A stretch of DNA of 64,000 bases from Caecitellus pseudoparvulus (lineage: Eukaryota; Protista; Bigyra: Bicosoecida): contig CBFFRQ010000069.1 of the NCBI GenBank assembly GCA_965644315.1, positions 558,001-622,000 on the forward strand, written 5' to 3'. Both the position numbers and the translations under genes were made by a program. The notes beneath the pieces were generated by a model. That model did not search any database. It had not been told where the DNA came from and saw nothing but the letters and a program-made list of their open reading frames with translations. Shown here in pieces: positions 32,420 to 37,303 of the stretch; position 1 is the first letter of the stretch; each line of letters starts with the position of its first letter.

Positions 32420-35400
32420 TCACAATGTGGTGATGCGGGTGGAGGGCAAGCCGAGCTGCTTCAGCATCTTGGTCATGGTCCCTTTGAATGCATGGCTCCC
32501 ACAGACGACAATGGAGTGCAAATCCTGTGATGGCATTAAGGCCTGGAGGACTTTAGGGGTGACGCGGTGCGTGAAGTACCGAGGGGGCAGGCTTGTCCCA
32601 AGGCTGTTCACGCTGACCCGGAAGTGCAGCTCAATATTTTCACACTCGGACTCCATACGCTGCAGCCAGTCCGGTTCAATGATATCAGCTGTATCATGAA
32701 ACATGCTCAACAGGACCAGCTTGAGCGGCTTGGCCCGCTTGCGAGCGAGTTGCTCCTTTGCGATTTCATGCTGGTACGCGGCGGACGCGGTGTTCAAGAT
32801 CGTGGTTGTCTGTTCTCCTTCACTCGCAGCAGAGGATTGCAGTTCAACTGCGGTGCGCTGAACCTGCCCTGTTCGAACCACAGTGTGATGCGTGCCTGGT
32901 TGAGTGCTGGGGATGGACGGATCCCGTGGCGGAATGCCAGCCTTGATGAGAGCGGACTCCCCACCTTCGCTGGCGATTTGGGACTGCGTGGATGAGCCCT
33001 CGTGACTGTGCTCAGGAGACGCCACATGTCTAACAGGTGAAACGGCAGCGACGGCACCTGAGTGAAGGCCAATGGCGCTGTCTGGCTGGTGCTCGGATGG
33101 CTGGTCATGGGCGGAAGCAGGCGCGGGGCCGACTTTCTGGTCTGCGGCTGCAGCCGCTCGCCGCGCGGAGAGGGTTGACGCCATGGCTAGCGTAGGTTCT
33201 CCTGCTGACGCATGTGCAAGTGGTACTACCTTGGCAGTGCTTGTGCGGCGTCCTGTCTGCAGCAGACCGCTGTGGGGGTGGGGCTCCATGGTGCTGTCGG
33301 TCAGCTGCAGAGGGGGCTGGTCAGGCTTCTCTACAGGCCAGGCCTCCTTCTTTGCTTGCTCAGAGGTCTCAGTGCCATCTTCACTAGCAGCACTGAAAGT
33401 TCCAAGGTCACTTTCTGCGATCCCTGCCTGGATGATTTGCTCTCGGGGCATGCCGGCAGTTGCCTTGGCCACCCGACTGCGTGCAACGAGGTGGGTAATG
33501 AGATCGAAGAACGGCGCCATGCACGTGCCTTGTGCGATGCCAAAGATGACGCCGGATGCCTGGTTCTCGAGCATTCCCAGGCCATGTGGGCCCTCCATGA
33601 AGACTTTGTCCCCAGGCTCCAGGGCCGTCACTTTTGGGGACACAAGTCCAGAGCGGTATGCGCGAATGTACATGAGAATGTTTGCCTTGTCATCCTGCCG
33701 CACAATGCTGTAAGAACGTGCAGCGTTGTGCCAAGGGCTCACAGTTGTCGAGTCAGTGGTAGGCGTGATGCCTGCTGCCCGGAGGCACCAGGCCATGGGG
33801 CCACGCTCGAAAGGGCCAGGTGGTGGCAGCAGCACCATCATGTGCCTGCCCAGACTGGAGATGGACCACTGGTCTGCAGGCACTGCGTTTGCTCGAGGGG
33901 AGGCAAACTCCATGCGCCACACTGGGCTCCTGCCACTCGTGACTTTGCGCTTGCTGACGACATGCCACTTGTCTGGGCCGAGGTCAAGAGTGGGGCCGAT
34001 ATCCACCCAAGACCTGCTCGGGTCAGCATCATCACGCAGCAGCACCCCTACACAGAGCTTCTGAAGCAGCTTGAACGCCCGCGCACTGTGTCGGTGCGGT
34101 GGCACATGCTTGTCCGGAGGCTCGTGTCCGTAGAAAAGCGCTCCCACATCCGAGCCGATGACACGGTTCAAGAAGTAGGCACCCCCAGGGTGACTCTTCA
34201 TGAAAGTGCCGACATCGTACACGGCTCCATCAAGGATGATCCACTTGGCACCTTGTCGAAGCCGTTGTCGCACCTCAGTGACTGTCATAGCCGCAGAAGA
34301 TGTCTGCATGGCTGCGTATGCCTCCTTCTTCACGGTTGCCGCGTCAGTGGTGTAGATGACGTACTCATTGTGCAAGACTGCGATAAAGAACAGCGCGCAG
34401 ACGACGATGACAATGATGATGTAGGTGGTGGTAAGGTGTGGCAGCAGCATGGACACTCCAAGGAAGCACTGGGTGAGGCCGAGTGCCAGCAAAAACCAAC
34501 CAAACAGCTTGTGGGCGCTCTTCAGAGGCACGAAGTACTTCATGGGCGGCGTGGCTTTCTCCTTCATCCAGTGGCGAATAATGGCCCCTGACACGATTTG
34601 AAGGAGCATGGCCAAGGTCAGGGAAATGCCGACGTATGCATGGGCGCGTTGGGTCGCAGATCCCACCGTGATCAGGGCAGATCCAGCAGCGGGAAAGGTA
34701 ATTGTGGCAGCCAGCATGGATGCCCACCGATGGTAGGCGAGCCACATCGGGTTGGTCTTGGCAAAGCGCACCGTGAAGACTGCGGACGGAACAAGAATTC
34801 CCCACACCAAGAACATGCTGAGGCCATGATACCCGAATGCTTGCACGTATGCGGAGTTGTCACCCTCAATCGCGGCAAAACCTCCGTTGGTGCCCTCGTT
34901 GCCAGCCTCGGGTGCTGTCCACAGGTCGATGTTGCCCATGAGGTAGTCAGTCCCATGAAACCCGTATGTGTCGCTGTTCTTGCTCCACGCCAGCATCATG
35001 GGGATGGACGTGTCTCCTCGCTCCAAGGCTTTGTCTTCTGAGTCCCCAGTCTCGAGGTCTCGCTGCCACGTGATCATGGTCTGTCCATCCACTTCACTGG
35101 CCTCTACGAGCTGCACGTCTTGGCTCCCGTCTGCGCTGGGCAGCATGTACCCGGAGCTCTTTGCATCCACTGCTTCTCCTTGCCCTCCCTGGTATCGCAT
35201 CATAATGACGTCGCCGTCAGCCATCCCGCTGCCGATGCCCCACGCAAACCACCCCGTGCCATCAAACTTCATGGACATGGTGATGCTGGATTCCTCTTCC
35301 GTGGGAGGCGTCCATCGCATTTCTATCGGCCCAGCAGTGACAACACGCTCAGTTGAAGCACCGGCTTCCGTCCCATTGCCTGCGTTTTCAGTGTTGTTGG

Positions 35401-37303
35401 AGGGCTGTGCCCCAGCGCCTCCAGGACTGGTGGTCACCGCGGGTGCCGGAGATGCTGTGGGCACTGGGGCAGGGGTTGAAGAGGGCTGGACCGCTCCATC
35501 TGCTTGAACTTCCAGCGAATGAGGGTCGGGGACACGCAAGACACTGGGAGGAACGCCGACCTCTCCAATGTTTCTGGCGATGATGTCCGAGTACTTTGTC
35601 TGGCGGATTTCCTGCAAGAGGTCTGTTCCGATGTATGTTTCCCCATCCACCCCAACATTCGCAGTGTTCTCATACCAGAATCGATCGGCGTCTCGCGTGT
35701 TCAGGAATTGTTCGCGGATAATGGCAGCGAAAGTTGGCCCGACCAGCCCGCCTTGTACCGGCTCCTCAGCGAGCCCACCCACCCACAAGTCCACAGCGTG
35801 CACATCACCTGCATATGCCGCCTCCAGTTGCTGGGCGGCCCTTGCATCACCAGTGATGTCGGCAAAGGACGTGACCCGACCCAGACCGAGGCCAAAGCGC
35901 GTTGCAGAGTATGATGGGACGCCAAAATCGCGACCCCGCATGATGTCGATGGCTGCCAAGTCGAGACGAACGCCTTCCAGAAACAGCCGCGCATCGTCCA
36001 CCATGGTCAGGTCGATGCTAGACTCTGGCTGGTACACGAGGCCACGCAAGATGTCCCCGACTGTGCACGTGTCCAGGTATGAGGGGTTGAAGTACGCGTC
36101 GCGCAAAAGGATCGGTCCCCGTCTGTGCTCTTCACCTGTGGCCGTGATGGTCCAGTAGGCAGAGTTGATGCCGCTGTGCCCATACCGATACGCAGCGACG
36201 GCGAACTCCCCAGAGACGCTGGGGTCTACAGCTGAGCTGTATCCCGTGTACGGGGCCAGTGGCTCTCCAAGGAGCAGCGGCAGGTATTCTGAGTATGTCA
36301 CATGCTGCAGCAGGGCGATGACCCGCTTCCTTGCTTCGTGGTACAGGCGGTTGTCGTCCCAGGTTGGGTGCGCTTTCGCCAATTCATCACACTGCCTGTT
36401 GTGTTCAAGCACCCACAATCCTGTGACAGCAAGCAGACCCGGGTTTTCGTTGCCACGGGGGTCTCCGGTCAAGCGCTGCCTGGAAGAATCGATGTGGCCG
36501 TGCCCAGCCATGGGGAAGCCCCACGCATTGCGAGGGACGCCGTTCGCTGCATCGCTGTGCAGCTTCCCTCCTGAGAATGATCGAATGTCAGCGGAACGGG
36601 CGTCACCGTTCCCGTACACAAAGCTTGCGTCCAGGAAGGCGCTTGCCCCGTTGACCTGCTGGCGAGGGTTGCTGGGCCCAGTGCCAGTGGTAGGATCCCA
36701 AGCATTGCGCTTGACACTGATCTCCGTGACTACCGTCTGGCAGTGGGGGTTCCACCACTTGTCACATGCCGTTACAGGGACGGTCATGATTTCTACAGGT
36801 GAAGCCGCGGAGGTGAGGACAAGATCGTGCGCTACGGCCTGCCCATGCGCCGCCGCCAGATAGCTGGCTTTGTGGGTATTGTAGGCAAACCGCTTGGCAG
36901 AGAAGAGGGCATTGCTCTGTAAAGGACGGAAGGGGTAGGATCAATGCACTCCGGCCTAAGAACGGCGTGGTAAGGGCTACGTGTTTCGATTGGGGGCGTT
37001 TCTATGTCCTGTCCGCTTCCAACAGCTCTCCACCCATTTGGCACCATGGGGACTTACGATGTCTCTGGCATTTGGGCCGCTCACTGGGGTACTTGTGCCA
37101 TCTGAGTACGAAACAAGGTGTGGAAGCAAGCGCCCAAACTGAGCTCCTGTTGCGCCTTTGCCAGCGTGGGCGCCCCGATTGTTCGTTGACCCAGTGACGT
37201 CTCGGTACTGGAAGGCGCTGACGGTGCAGCAGGCCAGGAGCAAGGCCAAGCCGACAAGGGAGACTCCGTACCGAATGAATGCCAAGCATCTGAGGTGAGC
37301 CAT
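32420..37303 (-). CDS. Heme peroxidase-DOMON-cytochrome b561-cytochrome b5-FAD/NAD(P)H reductase fusion (~1580 aa); exons 37303-37058 and 36916-32420
   Basis: Signal peptide; peroxidase (HGQAVAHD, GDPRGNEN, AAYRYGHS, RDADRFWYE); DOMON (WFAWGIGSGM...YGFHG); 5 TM helices with 4 His (YHG, YHR, AHA, AHK); b5 (VYDV...HPGG...HS); FNR motifs RSYS, GLVS, EGPHG, AQGTCMAPF and VCGS. The intron GTAAGT...TTTACAG is phase 0. Confidence 0.92.

What the first reader, a model, noticed from the sequence alone, without database searches (positions are those of the whole stretch)
32420..37303. Single-polypeptide transmembrane redox chain ending in a heme peroxidase: a DUOX analogue built from DOMON/b561/b5/FNR parts
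Seen in sequence: signal peptide, then animal-type peroxidase (~36.9-35.5 kb), P/T/A linker, DOMON with Met/His heme ligands (~35.3-34.9 kb), five TM helices with the four b561 His (~34.84-34.37 kb), cytochrome b5 HPGG (~34.2 kb) and FNR-type FAD/NAD(P)H domains. An odd TM number puts peroxidase and DOMON outside and b5/reductase in the cytosol. Established: DUOX couples a peroxidase-like ectodomain to a NOX-type membrane flavocytochrome, and DOMON-b561 (CYBDOM) proteins move electrons across membranes. Inference: this protein wires NAD(P)H > FAD > b5 > b561 > DOMON heme to a peroxidase. It may make and consume its own H2O2 (halogenation, prey killing, matrix cross-linking) or reduce extracellular iron, as a convergent DUOX. 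I know of no functional characterisation of this full architecture, although sub-combinations exist.
Basis: partly seen in the sequence, partly recalled or inferred. Interest (0 to 1): 0.9.

Follow-up and report, generated by a model that had tools for sequence, protein, structure and literature searches.

The report
Membrane electron wire ending in peroxidase
This two-exon gene of a marine single-celled eukaryote encodes one membrane protein that probably carries electrons from NAD(P)H inside the cell through five haems to a working peroxidase outside; it looks like the animal enzyme DUOX but is built from unrelated parts, and its widespread family seems never to have been studied.

Summary
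The gene lies on the minus strand: exon 1 at 37303-37058, a 141-nt GT-AG intron, and exon 2 at 36916-32420. It encodes a signal peptide, an animal-type haem peroxidase, a P/T/A-rich linker, a DOMON domain, five transmembrane helices, cytochrome b5 and an FNR-type reductase. A ~255-aa disordered insert splits the reductase's NAD(P)H lobe.

The membrane module is cytochrome b561-like, not NOX-like. All haem and FAD ligands are conserved in 40 homologues that share only 23-60% identity.

So this is not a DUOX. It is a CYBDOM-type wire with a fused electron donor (b5 plus b5 reductase) and a fused acceptor (peroxidase).

Family members with a peroxidase occur in Cafeteria, Platysulcus, a brown alga, Cyanophora and a chytrid. 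All are annotated as hypothetical, and eight full-text searches found no paper describing the architecture.

This scan had already reached the same family from a peroxidase-less paralogue elsewhere in this genome (s1-641861).

Function is inferred. Haem potentials favour NAD(P)H-driven reduction of peroxidase Compound I/II, that is H2O2 removal or turnover, over DUOX-like H2O2 production. Neither was tested.

RNA evidence for one continuous transcript is weak.

The parts
37214..37303 (-). Start codon and signal peptide (about residues 1-30 of exon 1: MAHLRCLAFIRYGVSLVGLALLLACCTVSA)
   Evidence: Sequence read directly. It has a basic n-region, a hydrophobic core and a small-residue VSA motif. 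No signal-peptide predictor was available.
37058..37303 (-). Exon 1 (82 codons): signal peptide plus the N-terminal 50 residues of the peroxidase domain
   Evidence: Pfam An_peroxidase profile positions 1-52, E 3e-4. BLASTP against the N-terminus of the Cafeteria homologue gives E 2e-5.
36917..37057 (-). Intron, 141 nt, GTAAGT...TTTACAG, phase 0, with an in-frame TAG at 36979-36977
   Evidence: The Pfam profile runs on across the junction (52|53). A relative at about 60% protein identity has the same split into a short peroxidase ORF followed by the long ORF (L001). No RNA read crosses the intron.
35543..36916 (-). Animal-type haem peroxidase domain (exon-2 residues 1-458). Distal Gln26, His30 and Arg154; Glu157 at the ester-link position; proximal His247, Asp324 and Arg327; Ala29 where family 1 enzymes have the haem-linking Asp
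   Evidence: Pfam E 4e-113. PDB sequence matches: 8s6c 1.5e-91, DdPoxA 6erc 8.6e-74, DUOX1 7d3e 2.7e-57, with printed alignments. Residue tally across the family.
35357..35509 (-). P/T/A/S/G-rich low-complexity linker between peroxidase and DOMON (about residues 470-520)
   Evidence: Translation. Length and sequence vary among homologues.
34901..35359 (-). DOMON domain (residues 520-672). Proposed haem ligands are Met565 and His654
   Evidence: Pfam E 7e-17. In the AF2 model it is a beta-sandwich with pLDDT above 90. Foldseek hits: DBH DOMON 4zel 2e-7, cellobiose dehydrogenase cytochrome domains 4qi3/1pl3/1d7b, and 6jt6. M565 and H654 are at least 90% conserved in 40-44 homologues.
34349..34855 (-). 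Five transmembrane helices (688-718, 723-747, 754-785, 792-824, 826-856) forming a cytochrome b561-like core. Outer haem pair H697/H759, cytosolic pair H729/H802
   Evidence: AF2 models. Foldseek top 5 PDB hits are b561 entries 4o6y, 4o7g and 5zle, TM 0.5-0.58. VIA-align: 4o6y Z 11.7, Dcytb 5zlg Z 11.4, against NOX5 5o0t Z 8.9. The four His are invariant. Pfam Cytochrom_B561 scores above its cut-off in homologue P0085 and in own-genome paralogues, but does not hit this protein itself.
34040..34282 (-). Cytochrome b5 domain (residues 879-959). Haem ligands H909 (in HPGG) and H943
   Evidence: Pfam E 2e-12. Foldseek matches to cytochrome b5, normalised by the b5 chain length, reach TM 0.7-0.85. 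Both His are invariant in 40 homologues.
33467..33994 (-). FNR-type FAD-binding lobe and the first strand and helix of the NAD(P)H lobe (about residues 975-1150). Motifs R1067-x-Y1069-S, G1109-P-x-G, and QGTCMAP in place of GxGxxP
   Evidence: Pfam FAD_binding_6 E 6e-6. Family profile against PDB: NADH-cytochrome b5 reductase 7rom 1.3e-15 and 2eix 1.7e-15. Motif conservation.
32702..33466 (-). Disordered, A/S/T/P-rich insert of about 255 aa inside the NAD(P)H lobe (about residues 1151-1405)
   Evidence: Present at the same position but variable in all close homologues, including Cafeteria. Contigs of related strains cross it with no gap or joint. Among the listed strain differences, 3 are synonymous and 9 non-synonymous inside the insert, against 19 and 4 outside it.
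32420..32701 (-). C-terminal part of the NAD(P)H lobe (about residues 1406-1498, with a CGSHAF motif) and the stop codon at 32422-32420
   Evidence: Pfam NAD_binding_1 profile positions 26-104, E 0.12. A second HMMER stretch aligns to b5 reductase 7rom residues 202-245 across the CG motif. C-G-x-x-x-F is invariant in the 12-sequence alignment A4.
29968..32250 (-). Tandem downstream paralogue on the same strand: a secreted peroxidase plus DOMON with no membrane part. It is a possible soluble partner
   Evidence: Pfam An_peroxidase 3.5e-110 and DOMON 2e-13. The first ATG is at 32250, with small 5' exons read by eye. The same tandem pair is present in L001 and L002.

Best explanation
The gene encodes a self-contained electron wire across the plasma membrane, ending in a peroxidase.

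Shown by computation:
- One polypeptide with a signal peptide, a catalytically intact one-ester-type haem peroxidase, and a flexible linker.
- A haem-binding DOMON domain (Met/His).
- A five-helix cytochrome b561 core with two bis-His haem sites.
- A cytosolic cytochrome b5 and a cytochrome-b5-reductase-like FAD/NAD(P)H module.
- Peroxidase and DOMON lie outside the cell; b5 and the reductase lie inside.

Inferred electron path:
1. NAD(P)H reduces FAD.
2. Single electrons pass to the b5 haem.
3. They move to the inner b561 haem (H729/H802), then to the outer b561 haem (H697/H759).
4. They reach the DOMON haem (M565/H654).
5. The DOMON domain, on its roughly 50-residue tether, delivers them to the peroxidase. 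This could be direct or through a small redox mediator that the peroxidase oxidises.

Because Compound I and II are the only strongly downhill acceptors, the net reaction is most likely NAD(P)H + H2O2 -> NAD(P)+ + 2 H2O at the cell surface. The protein would be a peroxidase with its reducing substrate wired in. [quoted passage not shown]

In this scheme the fused b5/b5-reductase replaces the cytosolic ascorbate that ordinary b561/CYBDOM proteins use. The co-located secreted peroxidase-DOMON paralogue may be a second, diffusible acceptor.
For: - Domains and ligands.
- b561 rather than NOX. The one-His-per-helix layout, with pairs on helices 1/3 and 2/4, matches the experimentally supported CYBDOM HYP1 (H211-H278 apical, H245-H314 cytosolic, DOMON M90/H174; PMC10784544).
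- Packing: the DOMON-b561-b5 model is confident as one body (pLDDT 89, pTM 0.76).
- Topology: signal peptide, five helices, K+R 9 inside against 1 outside.
- Conservation: the whole chain is kept in at least 40 homologues at 23-60% identity from stramenopiles, a glaucophyte and a chytrid. All six b-haem His are invariant and DOMON Met/His are nearly invariant, which argues for selection on the complete wire.
- The peroxidase is live: distal Gln-His-Arg, proximal His and the Glu ester position are all present, the same pattern as DdPoxA (PMC5787809).
- Thermodynamics: one-ester peroxidases have Fe(III)/Fe(II) at -0.276 V (PMC5787809), so a b-haem donor can reduce Compound I/II but hardly the ferric enzyme.
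- Peroxidase plus DOMON recurs as a unit on its own: the tandem paralogue, P0160 and P0186.
- Purifying selection outside the insert: 19 synonymous against 4 non-synonymous strain differences.
Against: - No experiment exists on any member of the family.
- The DOMON-to-peroxidase hop is pure inference. The complex prediction gave no verdict, and haem-haem distances could not be measured because the tools return no coordinates.
- The potentials of the b5, b561 and DOMON haems are taken from other families and from my own memory, not from this protein.
- A peroxidase running a halogenation cycle needs no electron donor, so a donor could even compete with that cycle.
- H2O2 crosses membranes, so the benefit of removing it outside the cell is unclear.
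- Pfam's own b561 and NAD_binding_1 models do not reach their cut-offs on this protein.
- RNA support is limited to contigs of uncertain library type and a few hundred bases of a metatranscriptome. None crosses the intron or spans the whole gene.
Confidence: 0.45

Rival explanations
1. Convergent DUOX. The wire reduces O2 at the outer b561 or DOMON haem to superoxide and then H2O2. The attached peroxidase uses this H2O2 to oxidise iodide, thiocyanate, bromide or tyrosines, for killing bacteria or prey or for cross-linking surface material.
For: - The overall layout matches DUOX: NAD(P)H flavocytochrome inside, peroxidase outside.
- The peroxidase has the full catalytic set of DdPoxA, which oxidises iodide and thiocyanate above 1e8 M-1 s-1 and has an antibacterial role (PMC5787809).
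- A secreted peroxidase-DOMON gene sits next door and would also need H2O2.
Against: - b561, DOMON and b5-type haems are high-potential and, from my own knowledge, poor O2 reducers. NOX haems are about 0.3-0.4 V lower.
- The genome already has at least three NOX/FRE-type genes (NAD_binding_6 hits), so an H2O2 source need not be built in.
- Nothing in the sequence marks an O2-reducing site.
Confidence: 0.22
2. A CYBDOM-type reductase of extracellular metals or small molecules, such as Fe(III), Cu(II) or an ascorbyl-type radical, powered by NAD(P)H. The peroxidase works independently, for example to clear H2O2 produced near reduced iron.
For: - Characterised CYBDOM proteins (HYP1, CRR) are ferric and cupric reductases whose DOMON haem is solvent-exposed (PMC10784544).
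- About 45 of 160 family representatives have DOMON-b561-b5(-FNR) without any peroxidase, so the wire works without it.
- DOMON-FRE fusions are known in Naegleria and oomycetes (PMC3591440).
Against: - Peroxidase-bearing forms are the commonest and are spread through the core tree.
- Peroxidase plus DOMON also occurs as a soluble unit, which points to a functional peroxidase-DOMON couple rather than a chance passenger.
Confidence: 0.13
3. A halogenating or cross-linking peroxidase whose wire only rescues it. Occasional single electrons return Compound II or III to the resting state, as superoxide or ascorbate do for myeloperoxidase, so the halogenation cycle keeps running.
For: Same structural evidence as the main explanation. 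It is thermodynamically as favourable (Compound II reduction) and is compatible with DdPoxA-like halide chemistry.
Against: A five-haem, FAD-containing chain is an expensive rescue device. No sequence evidence separates this reading from the main explanation.
Confidence: 0.1
4. Gene-model artefact: two or more adjacent genes (a secreted peroxidase-DOMON and a membrane reductase) read as one.
For: No RNA read spans the whole gene. Public gene callers start the protein at an internal ATG (P0001, 1455 aa).
Against: - Exon 2 is a single 1498-codon open frame covering all domains after the first 82 residues.
- The same continuous architecture occurs in dozens of independent assemblies and in curated eukaryotic gene sets for Cafeteria, Cyanophora and Discosporangium.
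- There is no stop, start context or spacer between the DOMON domain and the first helix.
Confidence: 0.03

Closest known systems
Dual oxidases DUOX1/2 (NOX family)
   Same: One polypeptide with an extracellular peroxidase-family domain, a haem-bearing membrane module and a cytosolic FAD/NAD(P)H domain. The peroxidase domains are homologous (7d3e E 2.7e-57).
   Different: - The DUOX membrane module is a six-helix ferric-reductase domain with two His on each of two helices. Here there are five helices with one His on each of four (b561 type).
- DUOX uses FAD_binding_8/NAD_binding_6; this protein uses a b5-reductase type.
- DUOX has EF-hands and no DOMON or b5 domain.
- From my own knowledge, the human DUOX peroxidase-like domain lacks catalytic residues that are present here.
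CYBDOM proteins (DOMON + cytochrome b561: Arabidopsis HYP1/CRR, animal SDR2/FRRS1)
   Same: Signal peptide, extracellular Met/His DOMON, b561 core with outer and inner bis-His haems, and very similar spacing of the ligands (PMC10784544).
   Different: CYBDOMs take electrons from cytosolic ascorbate and end at the DOMON haem. Here a b5 plus flavoreductase is fused at the cytosolic end and a peroxidase at the outer end. Pfam's b561 model does not reach its threshold on this protein.
DdPoxA of Dictyostelium (6erc), and the chain deposited as 'Lactoperoxidase' (8s6c)
   Same: These are the best solved matches (E 8.6e-74 and 1.5e-91). They share the distal Gln-His-Arg, the proximal His and the Glu ester position. 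As in DdPoxA, the Asp ester position is lost (Ala here, Ile in DdPoxA).
   Different: They are soluble single-domain enzymes. Here the proximal Asn (Asn-403 of DdPoxA) is Asp in this protein and in 40 of 58 family members.
Cellobiose dehydrogenase (flavin domain + DOMON-like cytochrome domain feeding LPMO)
   Same: A flavin loads a Met/His b-haem in a DOMON-fold domain on a flexible linker, and that domain hands single electrons to a separate oxidative metalloenzyme. The DOMON model hits CDH cytochrome domains.
   Different: CDH is soluble, its flavin domain is GMC-type, and the acceptor is a copper LPMO on another polypeptide.
Natural b5-b5 reductase fusions (Ncb5or/CYB5R4; CBBR of PMC12462446)
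   Same: A b5 haem domain fused to an NADH-b5-reductase-type flavin domain acts as a self-sufficient one-electron donor.
   Different: Those fusions are soluble or ER-bound donors to desaturases, globins or P450s. None is fused to b561, DOMON or a peroxidase.
DOMON-FRE fusions of Naegleria, Albugo and Phytophthora (PMC3591440)
   Same: An NAD(P)H flavocytochrome in the membrane with extracellular DOMON domain(s) as an added electron-transfer step. They are also uncharacterised.
   Different: The membrane module is of the NOX/FRE type, and there is no b5 and no peroxidase.

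Membership tests
Peroxidase-cyclooxygenase superfamily (Pfam An_peroxidase) | Profile match above the curated cut-off | tested here: met
   379 bits against a cut-off of 25 on exon 2. 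Exon 1 continues the profile at positions 1-52.
Peroxidase-cyclooxygenase superfamily (Pfam An_peroxidase) | Distal Gln-His-Arg and proximal His | tested here: met
   Gln26, His30, Arg154 and His247 align with the catalytic residues of 8s6c and DdPoxA (triads named in PMC5787809).
Peroxidase-cyclooxygenase superfamily (Pfam An_peroxidase) | Two haem-protein ester bonds (Asp and Glu), as in family 1 enzymes | tested here: not met
   The Asp position is Ala29 and the Glu position is kept (Glu157). This is the one-ester pattern of DdPoxA. Most of the wider family has Val or Ile at the Glu position.
Cytochrome b561 / CYBDOM | Four conserved His, one on each of four consecutive transmembrane helices, forming two bis-His haem sites | tested here: met
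   H697, H729, H759 and H802 are invariant in 40-44 homologues. Their position in the AF2 helices gives pairs 1/3 (outer) and 2/4 (inner).
Cytochrome b561 / CYBDOM | Pfam Cytochrom_B561 profile match | tested here: not met
   There is no hit on this protein even at E 10. The model does score above its cut-off on homologue P0085 (27.9 bits) and on own-genome paralogues (25.3 and 29.7 bits). The family profile matches those paralogues at 1e-41 and 8e-35, so homology is supported transitively.
Cytochrome b561 / CYBDOM | b561 fold | tested here: met
   The Foldseek top 5 are all b561 entries, probability 1.0, TM 0.5-0.58, but with E only 0.08. VIA-align puts 4o6y (Z 11.7) and 5zlg (Z 11.4) at ranks 1-2. 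The match covers chain residues 40-219, apparently b561 helices 2-6 (helix assignment is my inference). NOX5 scores Z 8.9. A Z below 13 is not decisive for helical bundles taken alone.
Cytochrome b561 / CYBDOM | N-terminal extracellular haem-binding DOMON with Met/His ligands | tested here: met
   Pfam DOMON 57-62 bits against a cut-off of 32.7. The fold matches DBH DOMON and CDH cytochrome domains. M565 and H654 are at least 90% conserved. Haem binding itself cannot be tested here.
Cytochrome b561 / CYBDOM | Ascorbate as the cytosolic electron donor | not testable with these tools
   A fused b5/FNR module at the cytosolic end suggests that NAD(P)H replaces ascorbate. This is inference.
NOX/DUOX | Ferric-reductase transmembrane domain (two His pairs on two helices), with FAD_binding_8/NAD_binding_6 and, for DUOX, EF-hands | tested here: not met
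   No Ferric_reduct, FAD_binding_8, NAD_binding_6 or EF-hand hit. The His layout is one per helix. NOX structures rank far below b561.
Cytochrome b5 | HPGG motif and the second axial His | tested here: met
   Pfam 47.5 bits. H909 and H943 are invariant in 40 homologues. Fold TM normalised by the b5 chain is 0.7-0.85.
FNR-like / NADH-cytochrome b5 reductase | RxY(S/T) FAD motif, GxGxxP and CG(P) nucleotide motifs, and profile matches to both lobes | tested here: inconclusive
   FAD_binding_6 is above its cut-off. R1067-x-Y1069-S and GP-x-G are conserved. The family profile hits b5 reductases at 1e-15. The NAD lobe is split by the insert, reads QGTCMAP and CGSHAF, and scores only E 0.12 in Pfam. 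NADH versus NADPH preference was not determined.

The most novel reading that the evidence does not exclude
This is the founding example of an unrecognised, eukaryote-wide enzyme class: 'wired peroxidases'. These would be the first members of the peroxidase-cyclooxygenase superfamily whose reducing substrate is a built-in trans-membrane electron-transport chain. They would also be the first b561 proteins driven by NAD(P)H through a fused b5 and flavoreductase instead of by ascorbate. Cells could then spend cytosolic reducing power directly on extracellular H2O2 chemistry. With the multi-DOMON relatives, they might also push electrons some distance beyond the cell surface.
Probability: 0.3. Interest if true: 0.85.

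Novelty: new variant of a known kind. Interest (0 to 1): 0.65.

Why it matters
Only two routes are known by which eukaryotes move electrons across the plasma membrane: the NOX/FRE flavocytochromes and the ascorbate-driven b561/CYBDOM proteins. This family joins the two ideas. It pairs an NAD(P)H-driven flavin with a b561 core and hard-wires the output to a peroxidase.

If the wiring works as inferred, three things follow:
- It would be a new way to run a haem peroxidase, with the electron donor supplied from inside the cell.
- It would be a natural single-chain model for five-haem electron transfer that can be expressed and measured.
- It would be a candidate player in H2O2 and iodine/thiocyanate chemistry at the surface of marine protists, brown algae, glaucophytes and chytrids.

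It is also a clear case of convergent evolution with animal DUOX.

Tried and rejected
- Pfam on the transmembrane segment alone gave no significant family (DUF4079 at E 1.4 only).
- A profile of the transmembrane segment against PDB sequences gave no hit even at E 10. The b561 assignment therefore rests on fold, the His pattern and transitive homology.
- Complex prediction with peroxidase (exon-2 part) + DOMON + 2 haem scored 0.00. The verdict was 'no answer', the controls were not run and my alignments were not used. This is neither support nor evidence against.
- RNA evidence. No run on record as RNA holds the gene. Contigs of two runs guessed to be RNA cover only 32414-33759. A seawater metatranscriptome library, flagged as probably DNA, covers 36154-36642. 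Nothing crosses the intron.
- Literature. Eight full-text searches found no paper on this architecture (the last looked for DdPoxA). Leads in PMC4855317 and PMC8027222 were irrelevant. Iyer et al. 2007 on DOMON architectures is not held, so an earlier mention there cannot be excluded.
- Naming the organism was not possible with these tools. The best named relative is Cafeteria, at only 37-42% identity.
- Haem-haem distances were not obtainable, because the models come back without coordinates.
- Exon 1 and exon 2 were searched separately by reference. The joined protein was never assembled, folded or searched.
- One frame slip and one unanswered structure call were simply repeated.

Full report
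GENE STRUCTURE. On the minus strand, a 1455-codon ATG-started ORF (32420-36787) sits inside a longer open frame. A 108-codon ORF starts at 37303. Reading the DNA shows an ATG at 37303 and a typical signal peptide. The first peroxidase residues follow, then GTAAGT at 37057. TTTACAG ends at 36917, and the frame continues at 36916. The intron is 141 nt, phase 0, and carries an in-frame TAG (36979-36977), so it must be removed. Pfam places An_peroxidase profile positions 1-52 on exon 1 and 53-528 on exon 2, which is an exact join. Exon 1 also aligns with the N-terminus of the Cafeteria homologue (E 2e-5). A relative at about 60% protein identity shows the same split into a short peroxidase ORF and the long ORF (L001). 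I handled the two exons separately by reference throughout. The joined protein was not built or searched. Residue numbers below are exon-2 numbers.

DOMAINS. Pfam gives An_peroxidase (4e-113), DOMON (3e-15; 7e-17 alone), Cyt-b5 (2e-12) and FAD_binding_6 (3e-5; 6e-6 alone). NAD_binding_1 scores only 0.12. The weak NAD signal has a simple cause: an alanine/serine/threonine/proline-rich insert of about 255 residues follows the first strand-helix of the nucleotide lobe. A family profile of the C-terminal part hits NADH-cytochrome b5 reductases (7rom 1.3e-15, 2eix 1.7e-15). A second aligned stretch lies across the CG motif after the insert. R-x-Y-S, G-P-x-G, G-T and C-G are conserved. The insert sits at the same place in all close homologues, including Cafeteria, but varies in length and sequence. 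Contigs of related strains cross it with no gap or joint. Of the listed strain differences, 3 are synonymous and 9 non-synonymous inside the insert, against 19 and 4 outside it. That fits a coding but weakly constrained disordered loop.

THE MEMBRANE MODULE. Pfam finds nothing in the transmembrane segment, and a profile against PDB sequences finds nothing. Four lines of evidence still assign it to cytochrome b561.
- An AF2 model of the segment (pLDDT 74) has b561 structures as its five best Foldseek hits (4o6y, 4o7g, 5zle; TM 0.5-0.58). The same structures are its two best VIA-align hits among 48,161 chains (Z 11.7 and 11.4). The match covers chain residues 40-219 of 4o6y, apparently helices 2-6 (the helix assignment is my inference). 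NOX5 reaches Z 8.9, and a NOX entry ranks 31st in Foldseek with TM 0.28.
- Each of the first four helices has one His (H697, H729, H759, H802). These are invariant in 40-44 homologues at 20-65% identity over this segment. Their positions in the helices pair 1/3 on the outer side and 2/4 on the inner side. This is the arrangement shown for the CYBDOM protein HYP1 (H211-H278 and H245-H314, DOMON M90/H174; PMC10784544).
- Pfam Cytochrom_B561 scores above its cut-off on the brown-alga homologue P0085.
- It also does so on two paralogues in this genome that the family profile matches at 1e-41 and 8e-35.

THREE-DOMAIN MODEL AND TOPOLOGY. With a 44-sequence alignment, DOMON-b561-b5 (residues 520-962) folds with pLDDT 89.2 and pTM 0.76. 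The model has a beta-sandwich, five long helices, a short amphipathic helix and a b5 fold. Foldseek matches the sandwich to the DOMON of dopamine beta-hydroxylase (2e-7). It also matches the haem-binding cytochrome domains of cellobiose dehydrogenase and pyranose dehydrogenase, and the last domain to cytochrome b5. Five hydrophobic peaks are present, K+R is 9 in the inner loops against 1 in the outer loops, and there is a signal peptide.

THE PEROXIDASE. The best solved relatives are 8s6c (1.5e-91) and Dictyostelium DdPoxA (8.6e-74). DUOX1 comes third (2.7e-57). The alignments show:
- distal Gln26-His30-Arg154;
- Glu157 at the ester position;
- proximal His247 and Arg327;
- Ala29 where family 1 enzymes have the second ester-forming Asp;
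- Asp324 where DdPoxA has Asn-403.
This is the one-ester pattern of DdPoxA. That enzyme has Fe(III)/Fe(II) at -0.276 V, oxidises iodide and thiocyanate very fast, and cannot oxidise chloride (PMC5787809). Across the wider family the distal His, Arg and proximal His are mostly kept, the Asp link is absent, and the Glu is usually Val or Ile.

THE FAMILY. The word-indexed search found 11 homologues with the same Pfam set. The exhaustive profile search found 261 clusters below 1e-30. I tallied the best 150 plus the first 12 with HMMs cut from my own alignment. About 60 have peroxidase-DOMON-b561-b5, most of them with the reductase as well. About 45 have DOMON-b561-b5(-reductase) without a peroxidase. 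Others are multi-DOMON arrays. Named members with a peroxidase come from Cafeteria, Platysulcus tardus, the brown alga Discosporangium, Cyanophora paradoxa and the chytrid Phlyctochytrium. A partial one comes from Jimgerdemannia. Pfam confirmed six of them. All are labelled hypothetical or 'cytochrome b5 domain-containing'. On an unrooted tree of the b561-b5 core, the peroxidase label needs at least five changes across well-supported branches. A multi-DOMON, peroxidase-less clade is nested inside the window's own clade. The outer end of the wire has therefore been exchanged repeatedly. The window's genome (30.6 Mb) has further b561-b5 paralogues without a peroxidase, three An_peroxidase loci in all and at least three NOX/FRE-type genes.

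CONTEXT. Directly downstream on the same strand (29968-32250) lies a secreted peroxidase-DOMON gene with no membrane part. The pair is conserved in L001 and L002. A direct repeat of 96-100% identity (28906-29533 and 37617-38247) brackets the two genes.

MECHANISM. The shown parts are the domains, the ligands, the topology and their conservation. The direction of flow (NAD(P)H > FAD > b5 > inner b561 haem > outer b561 haem > DOMON haem) is inferred from what each family is known to do. The last step is the weakest. I favour delivery to the peroxidase's Compound I/II, directly or through a small mediator that the peroxidase oxidises and the DOMON haem re-reduces. These intermediates are the only strongly downhill acceptors. 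The ferric/ferrous couple of a one-ester peroxidase (-0.276 V, PMC5787809) and the O2/superoxide couple lie well below typical b5, b561 and DOMON haem potentials, which I take from my own knowledge. The recurrent peroxidase-DOMON unit and the flexible linker recall the mobile cytochrome domain of cellobiose dehydrogenase. The DUOX-like reading, a CYBDOM-like metal reductase and a Compound II rescue role all remain open. The complex prediction gave no verdict.

NOVELTY AND LIMITS. Eight full-text searches found nothing on this architecture. The nearest described things are DOMON-FRE fusions (PMC3591440) and CYBDOMs. Iyer et al. 2007 could not be read. The scan itself reached the same family earlier from a peroxidase-less paralogue of this genome (s1-641861); my results agree with that report and add the peroxidase-bearing member. 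RNA evidence is poor, no coordinates were available for haem distances, and the organism could not be named.

Noticed in passing
window 28906-29533 and 37617-38247: Two direct repeats 8.7 kb apart, 100% and 96% identical over 300-nt blocks, bracket the two peroxidase genes. L002 shows a Ras-family ORF just after the soluble paralogue.
   Followed up: partly
window 29968-32250 (-): A secreted peroxidase-DOMON paralogue with no membrane part lies immediately downstream. It also lacks the haem-linking Asp (AAAWGQFIAHDL). Small 5' exons were read by eye only. The tandem pair is conserved in two other assemblies.
   Followed up: partly
P0025 (4632 aa), P0032, P0036, P0049, P0073 and others: Metagenomic relatives carry 5 to about 20 tandem DOMON domains in front of the b561(-b5) core, in place of the peroxidase. 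If each binds haem, they would form long extracellular multi-haem chains in eukaryotes.
   Followed up: no
P0259 (1136 aa): The precomputed Pfam set lists An_peroxidase and DOMON together with 7tm_3 (class C GPCR). This is a peroxidase-DOMON ectodomain on a different membrane module.
   Followed up: no
P0136, Phlyctochytrium bullatum: The chytrid member has a protein kinase domain after the reductase part (residues 1355-1584). This is either a real regulatory fusion or a merged gene model.
   Followed up: no
G000 C52:128912-130993, C57:583008-584662, C78:159212-160950 (L009-L011): The same genome has at least three more long ORFs with b561 fused to cytochrome b5 but no peroxidase. Two of them score above the cut-off of Pfam Cytochrom_B561.
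   Followed up: partly
P0001 and P0013-P0015 (public gene calls of this gene): Public prokaryote-style calls start at the internal ATG at 36787. They miss exon 1, the signal peptide and the distal His. Database copies of this protein are therefore N-terminally truncated.
   Followed up: yes
P0007: In one relative at about 50% identity the proximal-His motif reads GRVGALAS instead of YRYGHSG, and the protein ends before the NAD lobe. It may be a degenerate or mis-called copy.
   Followed up: no
P0176-P0178, P0189-P0277: The peroxidase domain is about 40% identical to 'peroxidase family proteins' of Planctomycetota, Saprospiraceae and other bacteria. It is only 31-35% identical to animal peroxidases.
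   Followed up: no
G000 C78:27516-28085, C18:526669-527130, C86:64370-64798: Three long ORFs match NAD_binding_6 (NOX/FRE type) above the cut-off. The organism therefore has conventional NOX/FRE flavocytochromes alongside the b561-based wires.
   Followed up: no
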